IMG/VR virus record: IMGVR_UViG_3300032331_003609
Coordinates: 124,001-188,000 of that record
Direction: 5' to 3' (one strand)
Length of the DNA stretch: 64,000 nt
The notes below the pieces were generated by a model. It was not told the origin of the DNA. It saw only the letters and a program-made list of their open reading frames with translations, and did no database searches. Of this stretch, positions 1,003-64,000 are shown one piece after another (position 1 is the first letter of the stretch; every line of letters starts with the position of its first letter). The position numbers were made by a program, and so were the translations under genes.

Positions 1003-1010
1003 GATATATA
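1003..1010 (+). promoter_or_regulatory. Putative late promoter GATATATA abutting the terminator
   Basis: Exact copy of the motif recurring in front of structural genes. Confidence 0.45.
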
Positions 1011-1038
1011 AAAGGCTTATCCTACCGATAAGCCTTTT
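1011..1038 (+). terminator. Intrinsic terminator after the tail tube genes
   Basis: AAAGGCTTATC-ctacc-GATAAGCCTTT hairpin followed by T-run. Confidence 0.8.
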
Positions 1039-1041
1039 TAT

Positions 1042-1323
1042 TTGCACATCATTTTAAAAAGGAATAGAACTCCAACATGGACGACCCCGGTGATAGAAAA
1101 AACAATCAAAAAATACAAAGAAAAAGAAAAAAGACTAGTCTTTTACAAAGATACGTCCCTAATGTTAGCTATGTTCTTTCTCCCATTTGGCTACGACGCA
1201 TTGTTCAAGTTAATAATGGACATGAGTGGTTCATATTGGGTAGCAGATATTGTTTTTTATTCAATTTCAGGTTGCTTCTGGTTGTCGTATATCTTACTTA
1301 CGAAACGTTTAAGTAGAAAATAG
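1042..1323 (+). CDS. Small membrane protein with two predicted TM helices (start may be GTG 1090)
   Basis: Basic N-terminus, hydrophobic segments LMLAMFFLPFGY and WVADIVFYSISGCFWLSYILL, basic C-terminus. Confidence 0.55.
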   Translation: MHIILKRNRTPTWTTPVIEKTIKKYKEKEKRLVFYKDTSLMLAMFFLPFGYDALFKLIMDMSGSYWVADIVFYSISGCFWLSYILLTKRLSRK

Positions 1324-1362
1324 GATAAAACCCTTGCATTTTCTGAATTATATTTTGTCTTA

Positions 1363-1394
1363 GATACTAAAAGAGTATAGATAGATAAAATATA
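1363..1394 (+). promoter_or_regulatory. Variant ECF-type promoter GATACTA-N16-TAAAATATA
   Basis: Same spacing and -10 box as the 46165 copy; two differences from GAAACTT in the -35 box. Confidence 0.35.
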
Positions 1395-1404
1395 AAATAG
1401 CTTC

Positions 1405-2388
1405 ATGGAAGATAATTTAGACGAGATAGCTTTAAAGCATTTGTCACAAAAAGAAAGCGAAAGCGGATTAGAGTATGACAATATCCCAGAAATTCAAGAA
1501 CCCCCTAAATCTTTAGGTAAAGCTTCATTTGTCCAAGAGATCGAAGAAACAGCATTAGGAATGGAATCTCCATGGAAAAAGATTCCGTTTACAAATTTAC
1601 CCTCAGAAGGGTTTGGCTATCCTCCGGAAACTGAAATAACAATCAGATCAGCAGAGGTAGGAGAAATTCGTCATTTTTCAACAATAGATGAAAACGATCC
1701 TATTGATATAGATGATAAAATAAATCATATAATTTCTAAATGCTGTGTAATTAGATGGAAGGAAGGCGTTTTAAATTACATGGACATTTATCAAGAAGAT
1801 AGATTCTATATCTTTATGTCTGTCAGGGATTTGACATTTGTCAAAGGAGAGAACCGAATTTACATCCCTGTTCAAAAAACTTGCGATAAAGATGAGTGTC
1901 CTATTCCGAGCGATATAGAATTGACATCTGCTATACTTTCTAATTTTAAGCTGGATCTAAAATTAAAGAAATATTATGACCATGAAAATGGATTCTTTCA
2001 ATTGGTTCCAAAAAACGGGGATCCTGCAATTCAATTATTCATTCCTACAATAGGCGTTTCACAAAAAATTAGAAAAATCTTAAGAGATAAAGTGAATAGT
2101 GGAAAAAAGTATGACGAATCTTTTGCTAGCATGTCTCCCTTTATAATTCCAAATTGGAGGGATCTGTCAGAATCAGCATACGATGAATACGAAAGAATCT
2201 CCAAAGGATGGACATACACACAATTTGTATTAGCAGATACTATATCCAAACAAATAACTTTCGCAACTAAGAACACACTATCAGTTCAGTGTTCAAAATG
2301 CAGTGCTGAGGTCACTGCACCTATCCGATTTCGCGGCGGAATCAGATCCCTTTACATTGTTTCAGATATCTTTGGACAATTACTTTGA
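1405..2388 (+). CDS. gp26: Baseplate hub / tail assembly protein, T4 gp26-like
   Basis: I.IR...V.E motif, C-terminal C-x2-C (CSKC); position between tube and putative tape-measure genes. Confidence 0.6.
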   Translation: MEDNLDEIALKHLSQKESESGLEYDNIPEIQEPPKSLGKASFVQEIEETALGMESPWKKIPFTNLPSEGFGYPPETEITIRSAEVGEIRHFSTIDENDPIDIDDKINHIISKCCVIRWKEGVLNYMDIYQEDRFYIFMSVRDLTFVKGENRIYIPVQKTCDKDECPIPSDIELTSAILSNFKLDLKLKKYYDHENGFFQLVPKNGDPAIQLFIPTIGVSQKIRKILRDKVNSGKKYDESFASMSPFIIPNWRDLSESAYDEYERISKGWTYTQFVLADTISKQITFATKNTLSVQCSKCSAEVTAPIRFRGGIRSLYIVSDIFGQLL

Positions 2389-2563: not shown

Positions 2564-2599
2564 TAATCCTATCAATATATAGGGTAAATAAATTCCAAA

Positions 2600-4327
2600 T
2601 TGGCAGAAGAGCAATTACCAGATTTAAGCACAGACACTAAAAGGGTTGAACACTTCAATAAAAAGGTTGAAGAGTTTAGGAAAGAGAGCTCAGATGTTGC
2701 AGAGGCTCCTAAGCAAGCATTTGATATGGCAAGGCAGTATGCCCAACAACAGGTGTTTCCCCCGTTTGGGTTTATAGCATTTCCTGAAGATTCTAAGAAA
2801 CACACACCGGATGAGATGGGGATCGGTATAGCTGCGGGAAGAGTGTTATTTGGGGCTGCTAGATTCTTAGATGGTTTAAAAAAAGATTCCCCTGAAAATT
2901 TAGTACAAAAGGGGATAGACACTTATAAAGGATTTGATGATTCTACTGCAGTGAATGAATTAACAGGAGCCACCAGAATGTCTTTTGCAACAGTTAAAGA
3001 CGGTTTACAAGAAATAAAATCAGCAATTAGCGCTGATGATAAAGAAGCAGAAGATCCATTCGAAAAAAACCCGATCCTTAGCAAGTTAAACCCTGATGAT
3101 ATAGAAAATTTACTGGACTCTACGGTCCTTAAATTCATCAAAGAATTAGGTTTAAAAAGAGCAGATGAAGCTAGTGATAAACCAATATTAGATAAAGGTG
3201 AGGTATCATTCACAAAGGCAAAAGAACTTGCAGCTAAGACAAATCCGATTGCACCAACAAATATAGAGGCTTCAAAGTTAAACACAAAAGATGACCCTGA
3301 GTATATGGCTAGATTAGAAAAAGCCAAAAAGGAAGATGCTTTGATGGATTCTCTTGATACAAATAAAGCAGGAGCTAAAATTTCTCCCCGCGAGGGGAAA
3401 AAAACAGAGGCTAAGCCGGAGGGGATTAGAGCAACTGAAACCCCTGTTAATACACCTCCCGTAGCTCCAACAACCATAGAGAAAGCACAAAGTGAATTAG
3501 TAGCACTTAGCTCAAACGTAACTAGTAACGTAACTAATAATACAACTAGTAATGCAATCTCTGTTACACAAGATCCTGATGCAAAACCTAAACCTATATT
3601 AAAATCAGAAACACAGGTAAAACAGGAAGCACCAAAGCCAATAGTTACAAAACAAGATGCAACACCAGCGTCAACCAATCCTCCAATTGAAGCAAAGAGT
3701 GCGGGGACTGCTCCTGTTGGATTGGGAAATAAGAGCTCTGTTTCCGACGACGAAACCCCACTCCTAAAAATGCTAGGAGAAAGCATGGGAATGTCCGCAG
3801 ATGATATAGCTAAGATGTTTGCGGGTAAAGAAGACAACTTACAAAAGGGATTAGATCTTACATTTGGTTCTGAAGCAGAGGCAACAGGAATAAAATCAGA
3901 TCAGCCAGAAAATCCTGCTAAGTTTTTACCCGATGAACCTAAATCAACGATAGTTGAAAAAGCATCAAATGCTACAGTAGGACAAGCACAAAAAGTAGCT
4001 CAGCAAGCAACTGCTATTTCTACTGCCACAAAAACATCAGAACCTGTTAAGATTGCAGAGGCTACACCTACACCAAAACAAGAGCCTACACCAGAGCCTA
4101 CACCCGAACCAACACCTCCAGCCCCTGTTCAACCAGAGCAGACTAATACGGAATCTACGGGGACAGAATCTAAGGAATCCCCGGCACTTGAAACAAAAAC
4201 TCCAGAGGATAGTACAAATAAAGAGGCAGGTCCAAGTAATGATGATCTATTGAAAGTTATGAAGGAAATATTAAAAACTCTTCAAGGTCCGTTAATAGTT
4301 ACCGAGAGTACGCCTAAGTACTCATAG
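2600..4327 (+). CDS. 575-aa protein at the tape-measure/baseplate position with Pro/Thr/Glu/Lys-rich low-complexity C-half
   Basis: Long ORF with TTG start, PEPTPEPTP repeats near 4075-4120, AATATATA late-like box at 2574. Confidence 0.6.
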   Translation: MAEEQLPDLSTDTKRVEHFNKKVEEFRKESSDVAEAPKQAFDMARQYAQQQVFPPFGFIAFPEDSKKHTPDEMGIGIAAGRVLFGAARFLDGLKKDSPENLVQKGIDTYKGFDDSTAVNELTGATRMSFATVKDGLQEIKSAISADDKEAEDPFEKNPILSKLNPDDIENLLDSTVLKFIKELGLKRADEASDKPILDKGEVSFTKAKELAAKTNPIAPTNIEASKLNTKDDPEYMARLEKAKKEDALMDSLDTNKAGAKISPREGKKTEAKPEGIRATETPVNTPPVAPTTIEKAQSELVALSSNVTSNVTNNTTSNAISVTQDPDAKPKPILKSETQVKQEAPKPIVTKQDATPASTNPPIEAKSAGTAPVGLGNKSSVSDDETPLLKMLGESMGMSADDIAKMFAGKEDNLQKGLDLTFGSEAEATGIKSDQPENPAKFLPDEPKSTIVEKASNATVGQAQKVAQQATAISTATKTSEPVKIAEATPTPKQEPTPEPTPEPTPPAPVQPEQTNTESTGTESKESPALETKTPEDSTNKEAGPSNDDLLKVMKEILKTLQGPLIVTESTPKYS

Positions 4328-4343
4328 ATACATTTTTTATTAC

Positions 4344-4373
4344 GAAACTTTTTAACTATATTTGTATAGTATA
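4344..4373 (+). promoter_or_regulatory. Overlapping ECF-type (GAAACTT-N16-TAGTATA) and Bacteroidota -7 (TATATTTG, 4357-4364) promoters
   Basis: Both motifs are present 11-20 nt upstream of the 4385 start. Confidence 0.6.
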
Positions 4374-4384: not shown

Positions 4385-4636
4385 ATGTCAGAGAGTAAAA
4401 AAACCTATATTGTATCAAAAGATCTTATTGAAAAGATCGTTGATTTTTTAGAAAACCCGTTCGATAACACAAAAGAATCTATAGAGATTCTTAAAAGCAA
4501 AGATTCTTTTACTGAAGATGAGATCAACAAAATAGTTGCTCTGTTAGGTAAATTTCCTGCTTATTCGGTATACCCAATAATTGATTTATTTAAAGGAAAT
4601 TTAAAAGTAGAAGAAATTGACCAGCAACAAGAATAA
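4385..4636 (+). CDS. Hypothetical protein
   Basis: 83-aa ORF, first gene after the promoter, overlaps the next gene. Confidence 0.7.
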   Translation: MSESKKTYIVSKDLIEKIVDFLENPFDNTKESIEILKSKDSFTEDEINKIVALLGKFPAYSVYPIIDLFKGNLKVEEIDQQQE

Positions 4637-5090
4637 CTACAAAGAACACACAGAAAAAGATTGTCAGGATCTAAAACAATTTAAATTAGATACTGTATAT
4701 CTAAAAATGGCTCAAGTGTGGGCATCTAACTCGCATTGCAAAAGAAGCCAGGTTGGATGTTTGGTGGTAAAAGATAAAACAATTATTTCCGATGGATATA
4801 ACGGAACTCCAACAGGATTTCCTAATATTTGCGAAGATGAAGATAATCAAACACTATCTTCTGTTCTTCATGCAGAAGCTAATGCTATAACAAAACTGGC
4901 AATGAATACAGTTACCTCAAACGGAAGTACAATGTACGTTACGCTATCTCCATGTTTTGATTGTTCGAAACTTATCATTCAATCCGGGATTAAAAGAATA
5001 GTCTTTTCTGAATTGTACAGAAAGATAGATTCTTTAGATTTGCTTAACCAGGCAGGTATTGAAATAATTTATATTAACTTACAACCCTAA
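4617..5090 (+). CDS. cd: dCMP deaminase (ComEB/Cd family)
   Basis: S.C.RSQVG, GYNG, HAEANAI and PC..C zinc motifs. Confidence 0.93.
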   Translation: MTSNKNNYKEHTEKDCQDLKQFKLDTVYLKMAQVWASNSHCKRSQVGCLVVKDKTIISDGYNGTPTGFPNICEDEDNQTLSSVLHAEANAITKLAMNTVTSNGSTMYVTLSPCFDCSKLIIQSGIKRIVFSELYRKIDSLDLLNQAGIEIIYINLQP

Positions 5091-5102
5091 ACCCAACACG
5101 AG

Positions 5103-5726
5103 ATGGCAAAAAGCATTCAAGACTTAGCAGAAAAATTTTTAGAAACAACTTTAGAGAAAGATTTTAAATATCTCTATGATCGAATTAAGCCTGGTTTATT
5201 AAATCATTGTAAATCTATTCTTATAGACGAAGAAATTGCTCAGGATGCAGTTTCAAAAACATTTGAAAAGATTTGGGTAAAGGTTGCTCAGTATGATCCA
5301 GCAAGGGGGAATTTTTCGACTTGGGCTTATAACATAGCTAGAAATGAATCCCTTCTTATAAAAAAGAATTCCAAAAAATTTACTCCTTTGGTTTATGAAT
5401 CAGTTGAACTGGAGGGGAGAGATTATGACGAATTCATTCCACTGTCAGACATTACGCCTGAAAGTATTTTTTCAGAGCCTGAATGGGAAATAAATAATAA
5501 AGAGGGTGGATTCGATGATTTATATGAAGTTGTATTGGAAAAGATGGAGCATTTACCAGCAATTTATAAAGATATCTTAATGGACAGAGAAATTCACAAA
5601 ATGAAGTATCAAGAAATTGCTGATAAATATAGTATGAAAAAAAGAGCAATAGCTACAAGGATCAGAAGAGCAAGAATTAAGATAAGAGAAATGTTCCCGG
5701 GTATTAAATTAAATTTTATTGACTAA
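5103..5726 (+). CDS. ECF-type (sigma70 group 4) RNA polymerase sigma factor
   Basis: Region 2 AQDAVSKTFEKIW...FSTWAYNIARN; region 4 LP..YKDIL..R.....KYQEIA......IATRIRRAR. Confidence 0.88.
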   Translation: MAKSIQDLAEKFLETTLEKDFKYLYDRIKPGLLNHCKSILIDEEIAQDAVSKTFEKIWVKVAQYDPARGNFSTWAYNIARNESLLIKKNSKKFTPLVYESVELEGRDYDEFIPLSDITPESIFSEPEWEINNKEGGFDDLYEVVLEKMEHLPAIYKDILMDREIHKMKYQEIADKYSMKKRAIATRIRRARIKIREMFPGIKLNFID

Positions 5727-6198
5727 TATGAAATCACTATTCTTTAGCATCTTTAAAATATTTGGCGTCATTAAGGACATCAAAAATTACATCTTTCTTA
5801 GAAAAATAATCAAGGACCAAATGATGGATTCTCCTCTTTGGGTTAAGAATAATCTAAGGGTTGATTGGATAGGAAGAATCTATACTGTAGTAAATCTTCC
5901 TCCTGAAGTAACAATGGCTCCTGATCTTCCAAAAGAACTCTGGCCTGCTTATTTAATAGATCAATCCAAAGGGTTGAACGAATATTTAACTTCATTAAAT
6001 TTACATGAGATTATAATTCCGGAATATAAAGAAATTCCGGATTCAACATCTTATCTTCTAGTTTACTATCCTTATTTTAGATCGTTTACAAAATGGTGGA
6101 TCTATACAAGGATAATTTTCTGGACATCCGTTGTATTAATACAACACTACACCCACTGGTTCTCTAACACGTATCAGTGGATAATATCACATTTTTAG
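5719..6198 (+). CDS. Hypothetical protein with C-terminal TM helix
   Basis: 159 aa; hydrophobic WWIYTRIIFWTSVVLI segment. Confidence 0.7.
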   Translation: MTNMKSLFFSIFKIFGVIKDIKNYIFLRKIIKDQMMDSPLWVKNNLRVDWIGRIYTVVNLPPEVTMAPDLPKELWPAYLIDQSKGLNEYLTSLNLHEIIIPEYKEIPDSTSYLLVYYPYFRSFTKWWIYTRIIFWTSVVLIQHYTHWFSNTYQWIISHF

Positions 6199-6201
6199 AA
6201 T

Positions 6202-7479: not shown

Positions 7480-7507
7480 AGGCCTACTTTATTAAGTGGG
7501 CCTTTTT
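7480..7507 (+). terminator. Intrinsic terminator
   Basis: AGGCCTACTT-tatt-AAGTGGGCCT (one G-U pair) followed by TTTT. Confidence 0.7.
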
Positions 7508-7513: not shown

Positions 7514-7521
7514 GATATATA
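7514..7521 (+). promoter_or_regulatory. Late promoter GATATATA
   Basis: 23 nt upstream of the 7545 start. Confidence 0.65.
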
Positions 7522-17339: not shown

Positions 17340-17408
17340 GATATATAATGGATATACTGACTTTAAACTCTGAATGCTTAAAAAATGGTTTTAGAACATA
17401 GATATATA
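17340..17408 (+). promoter_or_regulatory. Two GATATATA late promoters (17340-17347, 17401-17408)
   Basis: Exact motifs in the 132-bp intergenic region; the second is 21 nt before the 17430 start. Confidence 0.65.
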
Positions 17409-19935: not shown

Positions 19936-20292
19936 ATGGAGTATGTTAAAAACAAAGATCTAAAAAGAGCGATATTAGAATCAAAAGAGAATGGAAAATT
20001 AACCGCAGAAACGGTTAAAATGTTTACTTTAATAGTAAATGGTCTTTCAAAAACAAAATCCTATCGGGATATTGAAGATAAAGAAGATTGCATAGCATTT
20101 GGAATGGAGGATTTAATTAAATATTGGGACAGATTTGATCCAGCTAAATCCGATAATCCATTTGCATTTATTTCACAAATTGCCAAAAACGGAATGCAAA
20201 AAGGTTGGAAAAAAATACATTCAACCAGGTCTATAAAAACCATCCCCTTTTCTAGACTTACAAGGGATGATAATCAAAATTATAATGTCTAA
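19936..20292 (+). CDS. gp55: Late-transcription sigma factor, T4 gp55-like
   Basis: YVKNKDL...LIVNGLS...SY...EDCI..G.E.LIKY...FDP.KSDNPFAFISQIA.NG matches the gp55 pattern (YVNNKEL...LIAEGLS...NFD..K..NPHAYITQ). Confidence 0.85.
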   Translation: MEYVKNKDLKRAILESKENGKLTAETVKMFTLIVNGLSKTKSYRDIEDKEDCIAFGMEDLIKYWDRFDPAKSDNPFAFISQIAKNGMQKGWKKIHSTRSIKTIPFSRLTRDDNQNYNV

Positions 20293-20779: not shown

Positions 20780-21351
20780 TGGATTTTAAAATAGAAATAA
20801 GAGATGCTATAGAGAAAGCTGGATCCCCTGCAAAATTAGCGGAGGAAAGTTTTTTGAATTATTCAAAGAACTATGCAGTACTTACTAGTTCAGAGTCGCT
20901 TAGGAGTTTAGTTCAGGGAAAGATCTACACATTTTATTATGATTCAGATATTAAGGCAGATAAGGGATTTGTTAATAGAAGACCCGTAGTGTTCTTTGAA
21001 TCAAAAGAGATAACCCCATCAAAAAGCATAATAAAAGGAATAGACATGATCTTGCTAAGTCCAAAAGACAGAAAGAATTTCTTCATCCGATTACATTCTA
21101 TTTATGGTAAAATCATGGATCAGAACGAAAAAAGAGATAGATCTGCGCACATGCCTTTAAGATTTGACCCCTCAGTATTAGAAACTTTAATGGGAGGTAT
21201 CAAGTATAATCATGCATACACCGGATACAAAATGGAAAAAATAAAAGGATTAAAGGAAATAGAAAGAGAGGAGTGGAGATATTTAGTCTATCTAAACACC
21301 AAATCTATTGAGGGGGCTGATTTGAACGATATATACAACAAATATCAATAA
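20779..21351 (+). CDS. gp2: DNA end protector, T4 gp2-like
   Basis: GKIYTFYYD...RPVV...G..M..L.PK.R pattern; synteny gp4-gp2-portal. Confidence 0.65.
   Translation: MDFKIEIRDAIEKAGSPAKLAEESFLNYSKNYAVLTSSESLRSLVQGKIYTFYYDSDIKADKGFVNRRPVVFFESKEITPSKSIIKGIDMILLSPKDRKNFFIRLHSIYGKIMDQNEKRDRSAHMPLRFDPSVLETLMGGIKYNHAYTGYKMEKIKGLKEIEREEWRYLVYLNTKSIEGADLNDIYNKYQ
21328..21335 (+). promoter_or_regulatory. Late promoter GATATATA inside the gp2 3' end
   Basis: 15 nt before the portal-1 ATG. Confidence 0.55.
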
Positions 21352-24680: not shown

Positions 24681-24712
24681 TTGAAACATTTTTTATAATC
24701 GGGTTTTTTATT

Positions 24713-24720
24713 TACATTTG
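24713..24720 (+). promoter_or_regulatory. Bacteroidota-type -7 promoter box TACATTTG
   Basis: TAnnTTTG 18 nt upstream of the ligase ATG. Confidence 0.6.
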
Positions 24721-29021: not shown

Positions 29022-29029
29022 GATATATA
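29022..29029 (+). promoter_or_regulatory. Late promoter GATATATA
   Basis: 19 nt before the 29049 start. Confidence 0.65.
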
Positions 29030-34533: not shown

Positions 34534-34541
34534 GATATATA
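34534..34541 (+). promoter_or_regulatory. Late promoter GATATATA
   Basis: 15 nt before GTG 34557. Confidence 0.65.
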
Positions 34542-34556: not shown

Positions 34557-35303
34557 GTGGTCAATCGTATTAAAAATTTTAAACAGTGGATTTTAAATGA
34601 GGGTGAATTCTATCAGAATGAGCTTAATACCCTTTTTTGGACCAATTCTCAGTTTGATCCCTCTATAAGAGAAAAGCTACTTCAGATCGCTAATGAATTT
34701 TATCAAACGTTCAAATTAGAAATCCCAATCTCCGATATTCAATTAACTGGATCTTTAGCTAACTATAACTGGACACCTAAGTCAGATCTTGACGTTCACG
34801 TCCTAATAGATTTTTCTAAACTTAATCCAGATATTGCTTTAGTTAAAAAGGGAATAGACGGACAAAGATTTATCTGGAACTTAAGACATAATATAGTTAT
34901 GAGAGGACATGATGTTGAATTATATCTTCAAGACGTAAACGAGCCTCACATAGCTTCTGGTCTATTTTCTCTTTTAAATAACGAATGGATAAGAATCCCT
35001 AAGTATAATCCGCCCCAAATAGATGAAATGGATGTGCAAAAGAAGTTTGAGGGAATAGTAAATGATATAGATCAATTAAATGCTAATCTTGAAAGCGGAA
35101 GTTCAGCTATATCTCCGAGGGAGCTTTATGACCATTCAGAAAAGGTTAAATCTAGAATCATGAAAATGAGAAAAGAGGGTCTTGCAGAGAGGGGGGAATT
35201 CTCTGTAGAAAATTTAGTGTTTAAAAAGCTCAGAAACGAAGGATATATACAGAATCTTATCGACCTAATATCCAGGTCATACGAGAAAATTTATAACGAA
35301 TAA
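34557..35303 (+). CDS. Pol-beta superfamily nucleotidyltransferase with capsid-targeting-like N-terminus
   Basis: LTGSLANYNW...SDLDVH (GS..DxD) and DVELY; N-terminus IKNFKQWILNE. Confidence 0.8.
   Translation: MVNRIKNFKQWILNEGEFYQNELNTLFWTNSQFDPSIREKLLQIANEFYQTFKLEIPISDIQLTGSLANYNWTPKSDLDVHVLIDFSKLNPDIALVKKGIDGQRFIWNLRHNIVMRGHDVELYLQDVNEPHIASGLFSLLNNEWIRIPKYNPPQIDEMDVQKKFEGIVNDIDQLNANLESGSSAISPRELYDHSEKVKSRIMKMRKEGLAERGEFSVENLVFKKLRNEGYIQNLIDLISRSYEKIYNE
35242..35249 (+). promoter_or_regulatory. GATATATA inside the NTase 3' end, possible promoter of 35315..37840
   Basis: Exact motif 65 nt upstream of the next start. Confidence 0.4.
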
Positions 35304-37844: not shown

Positions 37845-37852
37845 GATATATA
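37845..37852 (+). promoter_or_regulatory. Late promoter GATATATA of the protease-capsid operon
   Basis: 19 nt before ATG 37872. Confidence 0.7.
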
Positions 37853-37871: not shown

Positions 37872-39953
37872 ATGAGTCTTAACCCTGAATTCGTTTTGGT
37901 CTTGGAAAAATCTTCACATAACCTGAAGTCCGAGAAGAATGGTAACGAATATTATCTTGAAGGTATAGCAGCAGTGTTTGGTAAAGAGAATTCAAACCAA
38001 AGAATCTACGAGGAAAGAGAATATCTTCCCCATTTGCAATATTTAAAAGAAAAGATAGAACAAAAAAGATTAGTAGGTGAATTAGATCACCCTAAGGAAT
38101 TTGATGTGTCTTTAAAGAATATTTCACACCTAGTTGAAGAGCTTGCTTATGATCAAGAGAATAGAACTTTAAGAATTAAAGTTAGACTTTTAGATACACC
38201 AGCAGGTAAAATAGCTAAATCTTTAGTTGATGCTGGTATTCCAGTTTCTATCTCATCAAGAGCAGCAGGCAACGTGATGGAAAACAAAAAAGTACAAATT
38301 AAGAAGATTTTTACCTATGATCTAGTTGCTGATCCTGGATTTGAGAATGCTCAATTAGAAAGAGTTTACGAAAGCTATGGATACAATCTTAACGAAAAGT
38401 CAAAAAATGAATCCATTTTAAATGGTCTTCCTTTGATGAACGAAAGCTTAGGATTAGAAAATGATTCAAATTTTAAGATATATAGAATCAAAGATCAAGA
38501 TAAGATACAAAAGCTTCTAGATAAGGAGCCAAATAAGAGTTTAATCATGGAAAATAATTTCGTTACAGCGGAAGAAATGAATGGATATTCTAAACTAATC
38601 AAAAAAGAAATGGACACTATTAAAGGGTCTATTGAATCATTGAAAGGGATTAAAGAATCTTCCAAAATAACAGAATCATCTTCTCTTGAGGAAAGAGTTG
38701 GTAAGTTAGAAAAGTATGCTGATTATTTAGCAGAAAACCTAGAGGCATCTATTAAGTATGGTGAATACCTAGCTGAAAATTTAGAAGATTCAGTTTCTTA
38801 TTCTAAGTATCTTGCAGAGAACCTAGACAAATCTATTTCTTATGCAAAATATCTTGCTGAGCATTTAGATCACAATATCTCTTATTCTGAGTACATTGCA
38901 GAGAACGTTGACAACAACGTAACAGCAGTTAAAGGTCTAACAGAGAAAGTTGATCAATCTATTGCTTATGCAGAATATGTAGCAGAGAACGTAGACAAGA
39001 ACATTAAGTATAGCGAATACCTTGCTGAAAACTTAGATAAGAACATCTCTTATTCTGAGTATCTTGCTGAGAACGTAGATAAGAACATTTCTTATTCTGA
39101 GTACTTAGCAGAAAACCTAGATAAAGGTTTAGCTTATAGCGAATACTTAGCTGAGAAATTAGATAAGAACATTTCTTATTCTGAGTACTTAGCAGAAAAC
39201 CTAGATAAAGGTTTAGCTTATTCTGATTATCTTGGTGAGAACCTAGATAAGACAGTTCATTACAGTGAGTATATCGCTGAAAAATTAGCTAACAACATCA
39301 GCTATGCAGAATACATCGCTGAGTCTGTAAATGCAGCTTCAGGAACCGCAGAGGTAAAAGAAGCAGTAACAAAAGCAATTTCTGAAAACACAAGAACTTC
39401 AGGATATGCAGGAGATTACACAGAGATCTCTTCTAAAATTGACAATTTATTGAACACTGTCGGTAAACAAAAGACAGAAGAAATAGCAGAAAATAAGAAC
39501 TATCCTTTCTTAAAGCTTATGGGCGAACAAGGACAAAGAGAATTTTTATCACTGCACGAAGGCCAAAAACAAAAGGTCGCCAAATCCTTAAACGAAAACA
39601 ATTACTCATCCGAAAAAGAGGTAGTTGAAATTATGGGTAAAACTCTGAATGAGCAAAATCAATCCGGAGAAAAATTCCTAGATTTAATGCCAGAAAAATA
39701 CAAAACTACATGGGAGAATATGAATGAGTCTCAAAAGGCCTCTATATTAGCTCAAAGTAAGTTTCATAAATTGGATACTCCTTACCAAATCCAGAATTTC
39801 TGGGCTACAAGAGGTATTGCAGTTACCAAGGCAAATATCGAAAGAATAGACGAATCCCAAGAACAAATAACCGCAGCTCCTCAGCCAAAGGGAATATCTA
39901 GAGAATATTTAGATAATCTTTCTGAAGCTTTAGCTGTTAGGTTTAAAAAATAA
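37872..39953 (+). CDS. gp21: Prohead protease (gp21, U9 family) fused to gp22-like scaffold
   Basis: LEGIA...N.N.RIY, GELDHP, NISH, LDTPAGKIAK.L, ISSRA.G, TYDLVADPGF; then about 500 aa helical scaffold directly before gp23. Confidence 0.93.
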   Translation: MSLNPEFVLVLEKSSHNLKSEKNGNEYYLEGIAAVFGKENSNQRIYEEREYLPHLQYLKEKIEQKRLVGELDHPKEFDVSLKNISHLVEELAYDQENRTLRIKVRLLDTPAGKIAKSLVDAGIPVSISSRAAGNVMENKKVQIKKIFTYDLVADPGFENAQLERVYESYGYNLNEKSKNESILNGLPLMNESLGLENDSNFKIYRIKDQDKIQKLLDKEPNKSLIMENNFVTAEEMNGYSKLIKKEMDTIKGSIESLKGIKESSKITESSSLEERVGKLEKYADYLAENLEASIKYGEYLAENLEDSVSYSKYLAENLDKSISYAKYLAEHLDHNISYSEYIAENVDNNVTAVKGLTEKVDQSIAYAEYVAENVDKNIKYSEYLAENLDKNISYSEYLAENVDKNISYSEYLAENLDKGLAYSEYLAEKLDKNISYSEYLAENLDKGLAYSDYLGENLDKTVHYSEYIAEKLANNISYAEYIAESVNAASGTAEVKEAVTKAISENTRTSGYAGDYTEISSKIDNLLNTVGKQKTEEIAENKNYPFLKLMGEQGQREFLSLHEGQKQKVAKSLNENNYSSEKEVVEIMGKTLNEQNQSGEKFLDLMPEKYKTTWENMNESQKASILAQSKFHKLDTPYQIQNFWATRGIAVTKANIERIDESQEQITAAPQPKGISREYLDNLSEALAVRFKK
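38712..39341 (+). repeat. 15 tandem 42-bp (14-aa) repeats, consensus SYSEYLAENLDKNI
   Basis: Counted in translation from KYADYLAENLEASI to SYAEYIAESVNAAS; unit 6 is degenerate. Confidence 0.92.
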
Positions 39954-41804: not shown

Positions 41805-41812
41805 GATATATA
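41805..41812 (+). promoter_or_regulatory. Late promoter GATATATA
   Basis: 16 nt before ATG 41829. Confidence 0.7.
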
Positions 41813-42941: not shown

Positions 42942-43768
42942 TGAAGAAGTACTCAGACTTCATATTGGACGATTCCCTTAATGAAGGTTTTCTAAAGAAC
43001 CTCTTTGGAAAAATAGGATCTTTCCTCAAGGGCAGTAAAAGATCTATTTTAGATAAGATTTCTAAAATGAAAGATGCCGAAAAGGAATTCATCAATAAAT
43101 CTGATGAATTAAATTATGATATCTTTTCTTCAGAACTAGGAAGAAACCAAGATCCAAATTCAAGACAAAGAGCATTGATGAGCAAAAGAGCACTTGAAGC
43201 TATAAGGCTTGCAAAAAATGGTGAAATAAATTTCATAGTAAAGGAAGTGAAAGAAATATGCGGTTCTGATCCTTCCCTTGCAAATTTTTACAATCAACAA
43301 AAAATGCTAGCAGACACAGAGCTTGCACAATATGCCTATGAGAAAGCCAAAAAATTTAAAGATAATGATTATGAGAGGGATTTTTATAATCAATGGAAAA
43401 CTTTAGACTCCGAGGTTCAAAAGGTTAAATTTGACAGTTTTGAAGATGAAGAAGACACTGTTGCTAATTTAGGAATGTTTGATCTTCCGTTAAAAGAATT
43501 TGTTAGTCAAATACAAGGATTACCTAAATCTGACATAGCTCAATTATTAAGCGATGCAAATGATTTAAAATGGAAAATTGCTGACGATTATAGAAAAAAA
43601 TCAATGAGCATTCGCGAATTAAAAAATAGATCATATAGATCCGGCGATATATCCTCTTTTAATTTTTCAAGAGAGAAGTTTGAAGAAATGAAAAATATAT
43701 ACAGAAAGGCTAATGTCTCTATAGACAATAAAATATCAATGCTAAAAAACAGATTAAAGAATATATAA
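42941..43768 (+). CDS. Charged coiled-coil putative internal head protein, related to 41829..42941
   Basis: MKKYSDFILDDSLNE|G; a FF/FL-...-I..I...E.EFI pattern is shared with the preceding gene. Confidence 0.75.
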   Translation: MKKYSDFILDDSLNEGFLKNLFGKIGSFLKGSKRSILDKISKMKDAEKEFINKSDELNYDIFSSELGRNQDPNSRQRALMSKRALEAIRLAKNGEINFIVKEVKEICGSDPSLANFYNQQKMLADTELAQYAYEKAKKFKDNDYERDFYNQWKTLDSEVQKVKFDSFEDEEDTVANLGMFDLPLKEFVSQIQGLPKSDIAQLLSDANDLKWKIADDYRKKSMSIRELKNRSYRSGDISSFNFSREKFEEMKNIYRKANVSIDNKISMLKNRLKNI

Positions 43769-49661: not shown

Positions 49662-49678
49662 CTAAAACTTAATTGATC

Positions 49679-49686
49679 TATATATC
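49679..49686 (-). promoter_or_regulatory. Late promoter GATATATA for the RimK fusion
   Basis: TATATATC on +, 17 nt before the minus-strand ATG. Confidence 0.65.
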
Positions 49687-49696
49687 CTTGGCAAAT

Positions 49697-49726
49697 AAAA
49701 AAGGAGATCTTTGAGGATCTCCTTTT
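49697..49726 (-). terminator. Intrinsic terminator between the Glu-rich gene and rimK
   Basis: AAAAGGAGATC-6 nt-GATCTCCTTTT perfect inverted repeat with T-run on the minus strand. Confidence 0.8.
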
Positions 49727-49749
49727 GTTTATTTTGTTTTAATTTATTG

Positions 49750-50349: not shown

Positions 50350-50357
50350 TATATATC
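50350..50357 (-). promoter_or_regulatory. Late promoter GATATATA
   Basis: 18 nt upstream of the 50331 ATG. Confidence 0.65.
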
Positions 50358-51340: not shown

Positions 51341-51379
51341 TATATATCTCTTCTATAATAATAAAACCAAAGATATATA
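51341..51379. promoter_or_regulatory. Divergent pair of GATATATA late promoters (51341-51348 minus, 51372-51379 plus)
   Basis: Back-to-back exact motifs between divergent genes. Confidence 0.7.
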
Positions 51380-53463: not shown

Positions 53464-53471
53464 GATATATA
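53464..53471 (+). promoter_or_regulatory. Late promoter GATATATA at the head of the glycosylation operon
   Basis: 18 nt before ATG 53490; downstream genes overlap or abut through 62530. Confidence 0.65.
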
Positions 53472-61526: not shown

Positions 61527-62530
61527 AAATAGCATTAATAACAGGAGTAAATGGACAGGATGGGTCATATTTAGCAGAGTTGCTTCTTGACAAGGGATAT
61601 ATGGTTCATGGAACAATTAGAAGGTCTTCTTCTTTTAACTCGGGAAGAATAGAACACTTTAGAGAGCATTCAAATTTCAAGAGACACTATATGGATCTAA
61701 CTGATCCAGGAAGTGTATCCCACGTAATTTCTGAATTAAAGCCTGACGAGATTTATAATTTAGCTGCTCAGAGCCATGTAAAAATTTCTTTTGAAATTCC
61801 AAACTATACCGGACAGGTAGATGCTATGGGTACATTAAATGTTCTGGAAGCAATTCGTGTTCATTCACCAAATTCTAAATTATACCAAGCATCAACCTCC
61901 GAGCTTTATGGAAAAGTTCAGGAAACACCTCAGACTGAAACGACCCCATTCTATCCAAGATCTCCATACGGAGTTGCAAAACTATATGGATATTGGATTG
62001 TTAAAAACTACAGGGAGTCTTATAATCTATTTGCATGTAACGGAATTCTTTTTAATCACACCTCTCCGAGAAGAGGTGAAAACTTTGTTGAGAAGAAAAT
62101 TATAGATTCCCTATGTCAAATTAAAAAAGGAAAGACAGATATACTAACTCTTGGAAATCTTTCTGCTAGAAGGGATATAGGACACGCAAAAGAATACGTT
62201 GAAGGTATGTGGAGAATGCTTCAATTAGAATCCCCCGAAGATTTCGTACTAGCAACAGGCAAGACTCACTCTATTAAAGAAATGGTTGATATGGTTTGTC
62301 AAAAATTAGATATTGATATAGATTGGAAGGGCGGGGGTGAAAGAGAAATTGCAATTGATAAATCCTCTGGAGGAATTATTATAGGAATAGATCCTAAGTA
62401 TTATAGACCAGCTGAAGTAGAGCTTTTACAAGGTGATTCAGCTAAAGCTAAAAAAGTATTAGGATGGGAACCAAAACTATCTCTGTCAGAAATATTTGAT
62501 GAGATGATAGCAGAATCACTAAAGGATTAG
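61523..62530 (+). CDS. gmd: GDP-mannose 4,6-dehydratase
   Basis: ALITG.NGQDGSYLAE.LL, YNLAAQSHV, QASTSELYG, PRSPYGVAK, NGILFNH.SPRRG, RD.GHA.EYV, RP.EV..L.GD. Confidence 0.97.
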   Translation: MKIALITGVNGQDGSYLAELLLDKGYMVHGTIRRSSSFNSGRIEHFREHSNFKRHYMDLTDPGSVSHVISELKPDEIYNLAAQSHVKISFEIPNYTGQVDAMGTLNVLEAIRVHSPNSKLYQASTSELYGKVQETPQTETTPFYPRSPYGVAKLYGYWIVKNYRESYNLFACNGILFNHTSPRRGENFVEKKIIDSLCQIKKGKTDILTLGNLSARRDIGHAKEYVEGMWRMLQLESPEDFVLATGKTHSIKEMVDMVCQKLDIDIDWKGGGEREIAIDKSSGGIIIGIDPKYYRPAEVELLQGDSAKAKKVLGWEPKLSLSEIFDEMIAESLKD

Positions 62531-62760
62531 TGATTAGTGTTTGATACGATTTCATTGGCTTTCAAAAGATCTTCTACTGTTTTAACTGTGTATATTGTTT
62601 GGCCAGGTACACCCCAGTCTTTTTGTTCACCCCAATTGATAAATCCTTGATGTGTGATATGGTTTCCTGAATTATAAGAAAAATCGTGATGTCCTTCTTT
62701 CGAAGACGCCTGTTCAAACTCATCCCTAGATGAAATATTTTTATATCCGTATTTTTCCAT
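62527..62760 (-). CDS. Small hypothetical protein
   Basis: 77-aa ORF; ATG overlaps the stop of the upstream minus-strand gene. Confidence 0.6.
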   Translation of the reverse strand: MEKYGYKNISSRDEFEQASSKEGHHDFSYNSGNHITHQGFINWGEQKDWGVPGQTIYTVKTVEDLLKANEIVSNTNH

Positions 62761-63338
62761 TATTTCTTTTTCTTTCTTAAGTTAGCTTTTGCCTGCTTGT
62801 AAAGTGCCTTATCTCCCATTTTAGATGTCTTACCCCCTGTAACAAACGAGTTAACCCTAGCCATTGCCCATTGTTGAGGATTAGTTCCTGGTATATGTCC
62901 TATTTTCCAAGCAGCATATCCTCTTTTCCACACTTTTTTTAAAATACCTAATGGGAATCTAGTTTTTTCGGATTTCTTTTTAAGTGCTTTATTTACTGGG
63001 CTAGAAACAGAATCTACACCCTCATTAAGATTGTCCAGGTTATGCTCCTCTTTTAGTTCATTAAAAACCTCCCAGGTTGCAATCTCTACTGCTTCATTGA
63101 ATCCTTCAAAACCTAATATTTTGCTGTTTTTATTTTCTCCAAACATTTTCTTGTATTTATTTGTGTATTGGCTAGTTTTTGTGCCAACTTTTTTACCTTT
63201 GCCTGCCTTTCCTGATTTATAATCTGCATCCCATTCAGTGTATGCTGAGGGATCATTATCAGCCTTATCCTTATTATCTTTAATCTCCCTTTTCATTATT
63301 CGGGGATTTTTGGTGAGATATTTCTTAGGTACTTTCAT
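62760..63338 (-). CDS. Basic virion-type protein with C-terminal domain resembling DUF5824-like proteins (true start MKVPKK at 63338)
   Basis: PLGILKKVWKRGYAAWKIGH.PG..PQQWAMARVNSF..GGKT; GATATATA 9 nt upstream. Confidence 0.7.
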   Translation of the reverse strand: MKVPKKYLTKNPRIMKREIKDNKDKADNDPSAYTEWDADYKSGKAGKGKKVGTKTSQYTNKYKKMFGENKNSKILGFEGFNEAVEIATWEVFNELKEEHNLDNLNEGVDSVSSPVNKALKKKSEKTRFPLGILKKVWKRGYAAWKIGHIPGTNPQQWAMARVNSFVTGGKTSKMGDKALYKQAKANLRKKKK

Positions 63339-63347
63339 AATTGTTTT

Positions 63348-63355
63348 TATATATC
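63348..63355 (-). promoter_or_regulatory. Late promoter GATATATA
   Basis: TATATATC on +, just upstream of the 63338 ATG. Confidence 0.6.
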
Positions 63356-63455
63356 CTGAAATAAATGCTTTTAATCTTCTATAATAAACTGGAAGAAAGA
63401 AAATAAAAGCCTTCATGGCCGCATGTTCAAAAAACTCAAGAAAATAATACAAATT

Positions 63456-64000
63456 ATGACAGATAAGGATATTTCCGAATTGAGGGAAGAATATTCCGTT
63501 TTTTCGTATCAGTGGATAAAAGGGGATAATATTTCACAAACCCAACATTTTGAAGATTTAATAGAGGAAGGTGGAAGAAAATACATCTTATTTTCGGATA
63601 AATCTAGAATAGCATTAGATCTATTAGATGAGTATATGATTAAGGTTGAAAGGGGGTTTGAAGAAATAATTCCAACATCCGATGTTAAGCTAGTATCCCA
63701 AACAGATCTTTCCCAAAACAAGGGGGTAAAAAAGAGGGATGCTCAGGAAATTAAAACCCAAGCCGTAGAAGGAAATCCTATTTTTGCTCTTTTATCAAAG
63801 CAAAAAGAAAACTGGGTAGATGTTGATCTAAAGCTCAGTATTAATCTGCCTCCTAGAAGTTTATGGGACGTTTTAATGGGTTCGTTTGATGAAGCGGAAA
63901 AGGATATTTTAGAGTACGTTACTAAAGACCTTGATATAGAGGTAGTCCGCCAATCTCTGAGGGAATCTATAAAGGATATATATAAAAAGCAAAAAACAAT
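63456..64000 (+). CDS. Hypothetical protein, 3'-truncated (absent from the ORF track)
   Basis: Manual translation MTDKDISELREEYSVFSYQWIKGDN...NPIFALLSKQK...LSINLPPRSLWDVL..., open to the window end; alternative ATG at 63423. Confidence 0.75.
   Translation, partial: MTDKDISELREEYSVFSYQWIKGDNISQTQHFEDLIEEGGRKYILFSDKSRIALDLLDEYMIKVERGFEEIIPTSDVKLVSQTDLSQNKGVKKRDAQEIKTQAVEGNPIFALLSKQKENWVDVDLKLSINLPPRSLWDVLMGSFDEAEKDILEYVTKDLDIEVVRQSLRESIKDIYKKQKT

What the first reader, a model, noticed from the sequence alone, without database searches (positions are those of the whole stretch)
1003..63982. Non-canonical late promoter GATATATA paired with a gp55-like sigma
I found 17 exact GATATATA copies by eye (not an exhaustive scan). 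Plus strand: 1003, 7514, 17340, 17401, 21328, 29022, 34534, 35242, 37845, 41805, 51372, 53464, 63975. Minus strand: 49679, 50350, 51341, 63348. Thirteen lie 9-23 nt before a start codon, including portal and protease-capsid. T4 gp55 recognises TATAAATA, so the compact 118-aa gp55 homolog at 19936 appears to have a shifted specificity. The motif also predicts which unknown genes are late (NTase, RimK fusion, poly-Glu protein, glycosylation operon).
Basis: partly seen in the sequence, partly recalled or inferred. Interest (0 to 1): 0.65.

Follow-up and report, generated by a model that had tools for sequence, protein, structure and literature searches.

The report
Variant T4-type late promoter (G/A)ATATATA
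A 245-kb freshwater phage related to the huge Bacteroidota phages marks its virion genes and many unknown genes with a single 8-base promoter box, (G/A)ATATATA, one core base away from phage T4's late promoter, and the box tracks a shortened version of T4's late sigma factor gp55 across related phages.

Summary
The window belongs to a 244,850-bp phage record with 46 exact copies. Thirty-three of them lie in the 4% of the genome that is intergenic, and in co-directional gaps they point at the downstream gene 28:1.

The core is ATATATA with a purine before it, and there is no -35-like partner. It is the strongest intergenic word in the genome. It survives in 33 of 34 orthologous upstream regions of relatives whose flanks have diverged. 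It also sits before portal, protease, capsid, sheath and terminase orthologs in other huge phages.

Spacing to the ATG is bimodal (4-6 nt or about 16-23 nt). This fits a transcription start 5-7 nt after the box, with one class of leaderless mRNAs.

The 118-aa ORF is a genuine gp55 homolog, but it is only the sigma region-2 domain plus a short tail. Across 79 IMG/VR loci, compact gp55 goes with ATATATA and full-length gp55 with ATAAATA. Replication genes use a different, bipartite, host-type promoter.

No gp33 or gp45 was found, though the record is about 86% complete. A second, ECF-like sigma in the window remains a weaker rival. There are no RNA data, so timing and start sites are inferred.

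The parts
19936..20292 (+). Compact gp55 homolog (118 aa): a sigma region-2 domain of four helices (residues 6-94) plus a disordered tail of about 24 residues. It lacks about 70 C-terminal residues of T4 gp55.
   Evidence: phrog_234 'late sigma transcription factor', E 6.5e-16. Pfam Sigma70_r2, E 1.4e-5. T4 gp55 chain 7d7c_F by sequence, E 6e-5, residues 3-94 = gp55 10-113. AF2 model pLDDT 82.7. Best fold match 7d7c_F, TM 0.75. It is the only phrog_234 match in the genome.
7514..7521 (+). GATATATA box 23 nt before the ATG of 7545-9044 (499 aa, no family). It lies just after the terminator hairpin at 7480-7503.
17340..17347 (+). Upstream copy of a tandem pair of boxes 61 nt apart. The same tandem layout precedes the tail sheath gene outside the window.
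17401..17408 (+). GATATATA 21 nt before the ATG of 17430-19679 (749 aa). The ortholog in LR756500 carries an ATATATA box 20-22 nt before its ATG.
21328..21335 (+). GATATATA 15 nt before portal paralog 1 (21351-22943). It lies inside the 3' end of ORF 20779-21351. Portal paralog 2 follows 4 nt later and has no box of its own.
29022..29029 (+). GATATATA 19 nt before 29049-29975 (308 aa, no family). It is the first box after the ligase / clamp-loader / exonuclease block.
34534..34541 (+). GATATATA 15 nt before the GTG start of the nucleotidyltransferase-like gene 34557-35303.
   Evidence: An ATATATA box is present upstream of the ortholog in 6 of 6 distinct relatives, with diverged flanks.
35242..35249 (+). 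GATATATA inside the NTase-like gene, 65 nt before the ATG at 35315 (841 aa). Its function is uncertain: it may be an internal promoter or a chance or coding-constrained copy.
37845..37852 (+). GATATATA 19 nt before the prohead protease gene 37872-39953. The major capsid protein gene 39969-41726 follows 15 nt later without its own box.
   Evidence: Protease and capsid calls: 17, 18, 43. An ATATATA box is present upstream of the ortholog in 10 of 10 distinct relatives while flanks diverge. It is also found before the orthologs in LR756500, LR756504 and LR745206.
38477..38484 (+). GATATATA inside the protease gene with no start codon downstream. It is most likely non-functional.
41805..41812 (+). 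GATATATA 16 nt before 41829-42941 (370 aa). It follows a perfect 12-bp terminator stem.
   Evidence: An ATATATA box is present upstream of the ortholog in 7 of 7 relatives.
49679..49686 (-). GATATATA 17 nt before the RimK-type ATP-grasp gene (49661-48174). It follows a terminator hairpin.
   Evidence: An ATATATA box is present upstream of the ortholog in 5 of 5 relatives.
50350..50357 (-). GATATATA 18 nt before the 193-aa Glu/Asp-rich protein gene (50331-49750).
51341..51348 (-). GATATATA 17 nt before the ATG at 51323 (232 aa, 51323-50625). It is one half of a divergent pair.
51372..51379 (+). GATATATA, the divergent partner, 21 nt before the TTG start of 51401-51973 (190 aa).
53464..53471 (+). 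GATATATA 18 nt before 53490-54620, the first of 11 tightly packed genes running to 62530. These include glycosyltransferases, GDP-mannose 4,6-dehydratase and epimerases.
63348..63355 (-). GATATATA 9 nt before the ATG at 63338 (192 aa, DUF5824).
63975..63982 (+). GATATATA 32 nt before an ATG at window position 64015 (genome 188015, 172 aa), just past the window's end.
1003..1010 (+). GATATATA in intergenic DNA, directly abutting the terminator hairpin at 1011-1039. The next ATG is 66 nt away. Its function is uncertain. A start 5-7 nt downstream would fall inside the 5' arm of the hairpin.
   Evidence: hairpin -14.9 kcal/mol, z -4.6
2574..2581 (+). AATATATA variant, intergenic, 18 nt before the TTG start of 2600-4327 (575 aa).
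43760..43767 (+). AATATATA variant 12 nt before 43780-46143 (787 aa).
   Evidence: An ATATATA box is present upstream of the ortholog in 4 of 5 relatives.
24687..24720 (+). Contrast class: the bipartite promoter CATTTTTT-N19-TACATTTG, 18 nt before the DNA ligase gene. Clamp loader, guanylate kinase and 5'-3' exonuclease genes follow. The same class occurs at 4331-4364 and 46149-46182.
5103..5726 (+). Second phage sigma factor (207 aa, regions 2 and 4, ECF-like). It is the rival candidate reader of promoters. It sits in an operon with dCMP deaminase and a PD-(D/E)XK nuclease behind the bipartite promoter at 4331.

Best explanation
(G/A)ATATATA is the -10-like element of this phage's own promoter class. 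It is the counterpart of T4's late promoter TATAAATA.

Proposed mechanism: the host core RNA polymerase carries the 118-aa gp55 homolog, which consists only of a sigma region-2 domain. This domain recognises and melts the box without any -35 contact, and transcription starts 5-7 nt downstream.

This gives two kinds of mRNA. Some are leaderless, with the ATG 4-6 nt after the box. Others carry short leaders of about 10-20 nt. All clear window copies belong to the second kind.

The class drives the virion genes (portal, protease plus capsid, sheath, neck, fibres, baseplate) and many genes of unknown role (NTase-like, RimK-like ligase, acidic protein, sugar operon). Replication and nucleotide-metabolism genes use a separate bipartite promoter with a Bacteroidota-type TAnnTTTG box.

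What is shown: the motif's reality, orientation, position, conservation and clade distribution; the identity of the gp55 homolog; and the partition between promoter classes.
For: Motif statistics:
- The window holds 18 copies against 5.4 expected.
- Genome-wide, 33 of 46 copies lie in the 4.1% of DNA that is intergenic, and ATATATA is the top intergenic 7-mer (59 of 90, z = 29).
- Orientation in co-directional gaps is 28:1 sense.
- Only the first base is degenerate.
- No -35-like element appears at fixed or variable spacing.

Transcription start:
- Box-to-ATG spacing is bimodal. In this genome 14 sites fall at 4-6 nt and 20 at 16-23 nt.
- In relatives 66 of 285 fall at 4-6 nt, with almost none at 0-3 or 7-15 nt.
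- This is what a fixed start 5-7 nt after the box would give.

Conservation:
- The box is present in 33 of 34 orthologous upstream regions of IMG/VR relatives, while flanks are about 45% identical.
- It precedes orthologs of protease, capsid, portal, sheath and terminase in LR756500, LR756504 and LR745206.

The sigma:
- Searches identify the 118-aa ORF as a gp55 homolog.
- The T4 pocket residues that hold the flipped -12 and -8 adenines are kept or conservatively replaced (N13, F86, Y97 to F, T99 to S).
- The -12 and -8 adenines are also kept in the motif.

Covariation:
- 46 loci with compact gp55 give 220 ATATATA against 80 ATAAATA gene-upstream hits.
- 33 loci with long gp55 give 7 against 47 (p = 4e-17).
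- The dominant motif per locus is 36:6 against 2:18.

Functional partition:
- 7 of 13 recognisable virion genes have the box within 70 nt upstream, against 0 of 13 DNA, nucleotide or regulatory genes.
- The ligase / clamp-loader block has the bipartite promoter instead.
- The genome encodes no RNA polymerase beta-subunit homolog; a scan for a T7-like polymerase was also empty, but its positive control failed.
Against: - No transcript data exist. All 20 sequencing runs that hold this DNA are DNA metagenomes, so neither start sites nor timing were observed.
- The window encodes a second sigma (ECF-like, 5103-5726), and every relative examined also has at least one conventional sigma. Presence or absence therefore cannot assign the box to gp55.
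- No gp33, gp45, beta-clamp or gp55 C-terminal clamp epitope of the T4 type was detected.
- No single DNA-pocket residue explains the A-to-T change at -9. The -9 pocket substitution H95 to F is also present in ATAAATA-type cyanophage gp55, and this phage's subclade has the T4-like NPFA..Q signature yet uses ATATATA.
- The box also precedes a tmRNA and lies within the tRNA cluster, so it may be a general phage-specific class rather than a strictly late one.
- The covariation test is not corrected for phylogeny, and the gene calls are crude.
Confidence: 0.72

Rival explanations
1. The box is a real promoter, but it is read by the phage's ECF-like sigma (window 5103-5726) rather than by the gp55 homolog.
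For: A full sigma with regions 2 and 4 is encoded in the window behind a host-type promoter, a plausible early-to-later cascade. All relatives that use ATATATA also encode at least one conventional sigma.
Against: A sigma with region 4 normally needs a -35 element, and none accompanies the box. The box differs by one core base from the experimentally established gp55 promoter and sits before the same orthologous virion genes as in T4-type phages. The motif choice tracks the gp55 clade.
Confidence: 0.1
2. The box is read by the host primary sigma, as an unusual -10 or -7 element, and marks constitutive or early genes.
For: It is AT-rich and TATA-like. Nothing here measures timing.
Against: The genome has a separate bipartite class, CATTTTTT-N19-TAYATTTG. 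Its second element matches the Bacteroidota primary-sigma -7 consensus TAnnTTTG (from general knowledge), and it precedes replication genes. The box lacks any upstream element. E. coli-type sigma-70 promoters are not enriched (66 found against 74 expected).
Confidence: 0.07
3. The box acts at the RNA level, as a processing site or translation-initiation enhancer, rather than as a promoter.
For: It always lies within about 35 nt of a start codon, in genomes that show no Shine-Dalgarno-like purine-rich motif in the start-codon contexts printed. A-rich sequence follows it.
Against: Spacing is bimodal, with a gap at 7-15 nt, rather than a single peak. At 4-6 nt spacing the box would leave no room for ribosome contact upstream in the usual sense. 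In at least three window cases it is the only conserved element between a terminator hairpin and the next gene (7514, 41805, 49679). Its architecture matches T4 late promoters.
Confidence: 0.05

Closest known systems
Phage T4 late promoter TATAAATA with gp55, gp33 and the gp45 sliding clamp
   Same: Both use a single 8-bp -10-like box with no -35 element, an AT-rich stretch downstream, and either strand. The number of sites per genome is similar: T4 has 50, of which 32 are perfect and 9 carry A at -13 (PMC2988020); this phage has 46 perfect copies plus 28 with A at the first position. Both boxes precede portal, protease, capsid and sheath genes. The specificity subunit is a homolog of gp55's sigma region-2 domain, and the residues holding the -12 and -8 adenines are conserved (PMC7892883).
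   Different: The core has T instead of A at -9 and G/A instead of T at -13, and ATAAATA is not enriched here. The gp55 homolog lacks about 70 C-terminal residues, which in T4 include the clamp-binding end. No gp33 or gp45 was detected. The hosts are probably Bacteroidota, not Proteobacteria.
Late promoters of T4-like cyanophages, pelagiphages and Aeromonas phage Aeh1 (NATAAATA; Aeh1 has a/gC at -13/-12)
   Same: These show that the gp55 family tolerates drift in its promoter consensus (PMC2988020). In my scan of IMG/VR loci with full-length gp55, ATAAATA dominates.
   Different: Those variants change the 5' edge of the box. This one changes the central -9 position and is linked to a truncated gp55.
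Sinorhizobium phage PhiM9 (gp55 without gp33)
   Same: It is a T4-superfamily phage with a gp55 homolog and no detectable gp33 (PMC4621102).
   Different: PhiM9 keeps a sliding clamp and a full-length gp55, and its late promoter was not defined.
Huge Bacteroidota phages: Lak megaphages, the 462-735 kb LR7565xx and LR745206 genomes, and 'moraphages'
   Same: They are the closest relatives by portal and gp55. ATATATA is the top intergenic 7-mer around gp55 in LR756500, LR756504 and LR745206. The moraphage paper describes 200-307 kb freshwater phages of Flavobacteriia with T4-type core genes (PMC12619734).
   Different: The papers I read or searched on these phages do not describe their promoters: the moraphage paper mentions 'promoter' once and a search for papers on Lak megaphage promoters surfaced none. 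Searches for the motif as a phage promoter also found nothing. Lak-A1 itself gave no clear signal in its very AT-rich, recoded genome.

Membership tests
T4-type late transcription system (gp55-dependent promoters) | Specificity subunit homologous to gp55 (sigma region-2-like, no region 4) | tested here: met
   phrog_234, E 6.5e-16. T4 gp55 chain 7d7c_F by sequence, E 6e-5, and by fold, TM 0.75. No region-4 hit in this ORF.
T4-type late transcription system (gp55-dependent promoters) | Promoter is a single 8-bp -10-like TATA box with no conserved -35 element | tested here: met
   The logo of 46 sites shows no information upstream of the box. No enriched k-mer appears 8-42 nt upstream of the box among 74 sites.
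T4-type late transcription system (gp55-dependent promoters) | Consensus TATAAATA | tested here: not met
   The consensus here is (G/A)ATATATA. GATAAATA has 13 copies with none intergenic. TATAAATA has 7 of 39 intergenic and TATAAT 39 of 442 (9%).
T4-type late transcription system (gp55-dependent promoters) | Boxes precede virion (late) genes; expression is late and replication-coupled | tested here: inconclusive
   Position is met: 7 of 13 virion genes against 0 of 13 DNA, nucleotide or regulatory genes, and orthologous placement holds in relatives. Timing could not be tested because there are no RNA runs.
T4-type late transcription system (gp55-dependent promoters) | Co-activator gp33 that binds the beta flap | tested here: inconclusive
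   No phrog_254 match even at E <= 10. However, gp33 is small and fast-evolving, and the record is linear and about 86% complete.
T4-type late transcription system (gp55-dependent promoters) | Sliding clamp gp45 as activator, with a clamp-binding C-terminal epitope on gp55 | tested here: inconclusive
   No match to phrog_223, PF09116 or the beta-clamp family PF02768. A gp44-like clamp loader is present. The T4-type C-terminus is absent, but compact homologs share a different conserved tail, acidic residues followed by x-Y-x-(I/V) at the C-terminal end.
T4-type late transcription system (gp55-dependent promoters) | Transcription starts about 6 nt downstream of the box | not testable with these tools
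   Only indirect evidence is available: the sharp spacing peak of ATG at 4-6 nt after the box, and conservation of the positions 4-9 nt after the box.
ECF / group-4 sigma promoters | Bipartite -35 and -10 elements at fixed spacing, read by regions 4 and 2 | tested here: not met
   The box has no -35 partner. The separate bipartite class in this genome could belong to the ECF-like sigma or to the host sigma.

The most novel reading that the evidence does not exclude
A clade of compact-gp55 phages (of which the named relatives are huge Bacteroidota phages, including the largest phage genomes known) runs its virion genes with a minimal sigma. This sigma would be a roughly 95-residue region-2 domain with a short tail, working without gp33, without the helix-loop-helix part of T4 gp55 and perhaps without a sliding clamp. 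It would recognise ATATATA and produce a large class of truly leaderless late mRNAs.
Probability: 0.3. Interest if true: 0.75.

Novelty: new variant of a known kind. Interest (0 to 1): 0.6.

Why it matters
- **Annotation.** The finding gives a simple, testable sequence rule for annotating uncultured phages with compact gp55, including the huge Bacteroidota phages. The rule bears on real gene starts (many were mis-set by longest-ORF calling), on transcription units, and on which of the many unknown genes are expressed with the virion genes.
- **Evolution of specificity.** It extends the T4 late-transcription paradigm to a truncated gp55 whose promoter differs at the -9 base. This makes it a natural experiment on how a one-domain sigma sets its specificity.
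- **Leaderless mRNAs.** The sharp class of ATGs 4-6 nt after the box predicts abundant leaderless mRNAs in phages whose hosts (probably Bacteroidota, as predicted for related phages in PMC12619734) show no Shine-Dalgarno-like signal here.
- **Limits.** It is not a new kind of system, and none of it has been tested at the bench.

Tried and rejected
1. **Pocket residue H95 as the cause of the -9 change.** The idea was that H95 to F in the -9 pocket of gp55 explains the A-to-T change. I rejected it because cyanophage gp55 of the ATAAATA type also has F there.

2. **A single specificity residue.** Most ATATATA-type proteins read NAFAYFTE and ATAAATA-type proteins read NPFAYFTQ. This phage's own subclade reads NPFA(F/Y)..Q yet uses ATATATA, so no simple rule holds.

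3. **RNA evidence.** I did not use read laying, because contigs of DNA runs cannot show RNA starts.

4. **Missing partners.** Searches for gp33, gp45, beta-clamp and B-family DNA polymerase were empty. phmmer with cyanophage gp45 and DNA polymerase was also empty. Because the record is linear and about 86% complete, I treat these as inconclusive and not as absences.

5. **Phage-encoded RNA polymerase.** The scan for an RNA polymerase beta subunit was empty. The T7-like polymerase scan (PF00940) was also empty, but its positive control stayed silent, so it says little.

6. **Lak-A1.** There was no clear ATATATA enrichment in 40 kb (26% GC, TAG recoded) apart from one copy before the portal gene.

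7. **Chryseobacterium phage MA9V-1.** The top intergenic word is TAAATTTA. By eye its virion genes carry TATACATA, TATAAATA or ATATATA. This was not quantified.

8. **Terminators upstream of boxes.** Only 2 of 46 sites passed a strict perfect-stem rule (0.5% at random positions), so this is an anecdote for three window sites and not a statistic.

9. **E. coli-type sigma-70 promoters.** They are not enriched (66 found against 74 expected).

10. **The promoter of the gp55 gene itself.** No conserved element was seen in its upstream region among six relatives.

11. **Tools left unused.** I did not run complex prediction because no clamp partner was identified.

Full report
**1. The observation**

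An exact scan of the window finds 18 GATATATA. Dinucleotide-preserving shuffles give 5.4 +/- 2.6, with a maximum of 15.

The window is bases 124001-188000 of a single 244,850-bp virus record with 34.4% GC. IMG/VR classes the record as linear and CheckV estimates it as 86% complete.

Genome-wide there are 46 exact copies. With crude longest-ORF gene calling (280 genes, 95% coding), 33 copies lie wholly in intergenic DNA, which is 4.1% of positions. Most copies that seemed to lie inside a gene are in fact followed within 5-25 nt by an ATG that opens the rest of that ORF, so the crude start was wrong.

In gaps between co-directional genes the box points at the downstream gene 28 times and away once (p = 1e-7). 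For AATATATA the count is 11:0.

**2. What the element is**

A scan of all single-base variants shows that only the first base is free:
- G: 46 copies, 33 intergenic.
- A: 28 copies, 15 intergenic.
- T: 10 copies, 6 intergenic.
- C: 6 copies, 3 intergenic.

Every other change drops to background. For example, GATAAATA has 13 copies and none is intergenic.

In a de novo search, ATATATA is the most intergenic-enriched 7-mer of the genome (59 of 90, z = 29), and GATATATA is the top 8-mer.

The logo of the 46 sites shows no information upstream of the box, and no enriched k-mer appears 8-42 nt upstream of the box. There is a mild A preference just downstream.

The element is therefore a solitary, oriented 8-bp box. 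This is the architecture of T4 late promoters: an 8-bp TATA box, no -35 element and AT-rich DNA downstream. T4 has 50 sites, of which 32 are perfect and 9 carry A at -13 (PMC2988020).

**3. Where transcription probably starts**

The distance from the box to the first ATG that opens at least 60 codons is bimodal.
- In this genome, 14 of 47 (G/A)ATATATA sites have 4-6 nt, few have 10-15 nt, 20 have 16-23 nt and none has 0-3 nt.
- In relatives with compact gp55, 66 of 285 have 4-6 nt, almost none have 0-3 or 7-15 nt, and there is a broad second peak at 16-26 nt.

A fixed start 5-7 nt after the box explains both classes: leaderless mRNAs that begin at the A of the ATG, and mRNAs with leaders of about 10-20 nt. 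The geometry is that of T4, where the box occupies -13 to -6 (PMC7892883).

This is inference. No RNA run holds this DNA. All 20 runs are DNA metagenomes, mostly freshwater, from 14 studies.

**4. Conservation**

Thirteen IMG/VR relatives were fetched with the protease gene, at 33-100% identity over the protease N-terminus. Among them, ATATATA is present upstream of the orthologous gene in 33 of 34 distinct upstream regions:
- protease 10/10
- 41829 gene 7/7
- NTase-like gene 6/6
- RimK-like gene 5/5
- 43780 gene 4/5
- 29049 gene 1/1

The 12 nt upstream of the box are only about 45% identical to the window. The G before the box is kept in 85% of cases, and positions 4-9 nt after the box in 81-94%.

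In the distant huge phages LR756500, LR756504 and LR745206 (portal 32-45% identical), ATATATA is again the top intergenic 7-mer around gp55. It sits 16-31 nt before the ATG of orthologs of the protease, capsid, portal and 749-aa genes, and also of the sheath, the terminase and the TnsA-like gene.

The G at the first position is a preference of this phage's subclade (57-76% G). The wider clade prefers A (49%), then G (26%) and T (22%).

**5. Which genes carry the box**

Genes directly behind a box that have a recognisable function:
- tail sheath (two tandem boxes)
- a neck / head-closure protein
- portal paralog 1
- prohead protease, with the major capsid gene 15 nt behind it
- collagen-like fibre proteins
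- a unit with the baseplate wedge gene

Genes behind a box with non-virion or unknown roles:
- an NTase-like gene
- a RimK-type ATP-grasp gene
- a 193-aa Glu/Asp-rich protein
- a DUF5824 protein
- the first gene of an 11-gene GDP-sugar and glycosyltransferase block

. Most others have no family.

Seven of 13 recognisable virion genes have the box within 70 nt upstream, and the other six follow such a gene in the same direction. This compares with 0 of 13 DNA, nucleotide or regulatory genes (p = 0.005; small numbers, and neighbouring genes are not independent).

**6. A second promoter class**

Eight sites in the genome share CATTTTTT-N19-TA(C/T)ATTTG with an identical 34-nt span. The second element matches the Bacteroidota primary-sigma -7 consensus TAnnTTTG; that consensus comes from general knowledge and was not tested here.

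In the window this class precedes three units:
- at 24687: the DNA ligase / clamp-loader / guanylate kinase / 5'-3' exonuclease block
- at 4331: an operon with dCMP deaminase, an ECF-like sigma and a PD-(D/E)XK nuclease
- at 46149: the 46203 gene

Two promoter classes thus divide the genes along the early-or-replication versus virion line. This is the main support for calling the box 'late'.

**7. The sigma**

The 118-aa ORF matches the following:
- PHROG 234, 'late sigma transcription factor' (E 6.5e-16; residues 7-107 = profile positions 25-125 of 181)
- Pfam Sigma70_r2
- T4 gp55 in the open-complex structure 7D7C (E 6e-5; residues 3-94 = gp55 10-113)

An AlphaFold model built on 40 homologs (pLDDT 82.7) has four helices (residues 6-94) and a disordered tail. 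Its best structural match is 7d7c_F (TM 0.75), followed by region-2 domains of many sigmas. It is the only gp55-type gene in the record.

In T4, gp55 flips out the non-template bases at -12 (Y97), -9 (a shallow pocket formed by N13 and H95) and -8 (T99) (PMC7892883). In the alignment the residues here are N6 (=N13), L37 (=L54), T40 (=R57), F67 (=F86), F76 (=H95), F78 (=Y97) and S80 (=T99).

Placed against TATAAATA, the box keeps A at -12 and -8 and differs at -9 (T for A) and at -13.

I tested whether H95 to F explains the -9 change. It does not, because ATAAATA-type cyanophage gp55 also has F at that position.

**8. Covariation of sigma type and box**

A profile of compact gp55 proteins retrieved 80 IMG/VR loci, of which 79 were analysed (one with an anomalous 321-aa gp55 ORF was left out).
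- In 46 loci whose gp55 is 156 aa or shorter, 220 ATATATA and 80 ATAAATA copies sit just upstream of genes.
- In 33 loci with gp55 of 157 aa or longer (the T4 / cyanophage type), the counts are 7 and 47 (Fisher p = 4e-17).
- The dominant motif per locus is 36:6 against 2:18.

This is the best available evidence that the box belongs to gp55. It is not corrected for shared ancestry. A small intermediate group (132-139 aa) uses ATAAATA, so length alone is not the determinant.

**9. What is missing or open**

- No match was found to gp33, gp45, a beta-clamp or a B-family DNA polymerase, although a gp44-like clamp loader is present. With about 14% of the genome possibly missing, these are not proofs of absence.
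- The compact gp55 proteins lack T4's C-terminal region with its clamp-binding end. They share a different conserved tail, acidic residues followed by x-Y-x-(I/V) at the C-terminal end. Its role is unknown.
- The ECF-like sigma at 5103-5726 is a rival reader. I rate it low because a sigma with region 4 should need a -35 element, and because the box is one core base from the proven gp55 promoter at orthologous genes.
- The box also precedes a phage tmRNA and lies within the tRNA cluster outside the window. The class may therefore be 'phage-specific' rather than strictly late.
- Sites 1003, 35242 and 38477 are doubtful as promoters.

**10. Novelty**

Full-text searches found no paper that names GATATATA or ATATATA as a promoter of gp55-type phages. 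The paper on the similar 200-307 kb freshwater 'moraphages' mentions 'promoter' once and does not describe one.

Drift of the late consensus within the T4 family is known (Aeh1; PMC2988020), as is a gp55 without gp33 (PhiM9; PMC4621102). I therefore class this as a new variant of a known kind.

It is well supported as a sequence feature and useful for annotating compact-gp55 phages, including the huge Bacteroidota phages. Timing, transcription start and the sigma that reads the box remain inferred.

Noticed in passing
window 21351-22943 and 22947-24680: Two tandem T4-type portal (gp20, PF07230) genes, 51% identical over their full length. Only the first has a box. Two portal paralogs in one phage is unusual.
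   Followed up: partly
window 5103-5726 (operon 4385-6948): A second phage sigma factor with regions 2 and 4 (ECF-like). It appears to be co-transcribed with a dCMP deaminase (4617-5090) and a PD-(D/E)XK nuclease (6202-6948) from a host-type promoter at 4331.
   Followed up: partly
window 4331-4364, 24687-24720, 46149-46182; five more in the genome: A bipartite promoter class, aaaCATTTTTT-N19-TA(C/T)ATTTG, with an identical 34-nt span at eight sites. It often has GAAACT in the spacer. It precedes replication and nucleotide-metabolism genes.
   Followed up: partly
genome 80042-95637 (L011 42-15637), outside the window: A phage-encoded tmRNA (Rfam 80 bits) and 13 tRNA genes. An AATATATA box lies 25 nt before the tmRNA, and GATATATA boxes lie inside the tRNA cluster.
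   Followed up: partly
genome 24150 and 32265 (L008 4150, 12265), outside the window: Two GATATATA boxes are each followed by the same stretch of about 25 nt (GAAAAAATCCTCATTCCGT) and then a roughly 120-160 nt gap before the next gene (shown for the first site). There is no Rfam match. This may be a shared regulatory RNA or leader.
   Followed up: no
window 48174-50331, minus strand: A RimK-type ATP-grasp ligase with a C-terminal zinc-protease-like part lies next to a 193-aa protein that is mostly Glu and Asp. Each gene has its own box. This could be an enzyme-substrate pair for glutamylation.
   Followed up: no
window 20267-20779: A TnsA-like endonuclease gene overlaps the last 26 nt of the gp55 gene. 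Its orthologs sit next to gp55 in three huge phages and there carry their own ATATATA box.
   Followed up: partly
window 19746-19932: Between a terminator after the 749-aa gene and the gp55 start there is an open frame of about 60 codons. It is coiled-coil-like with an acidic end and has no ATG (a TTG is possible). Whether it is a small gene, for example a co-factor, is unknown.
   Followed up: no
window 1003-1039: A box directly abuts a strong terminator hairpin (-14.9 kcal/mol). A transcript started 5-7 nt after the box would begin inside the 5' arm and so escape that terminator.
   Followed up: partly
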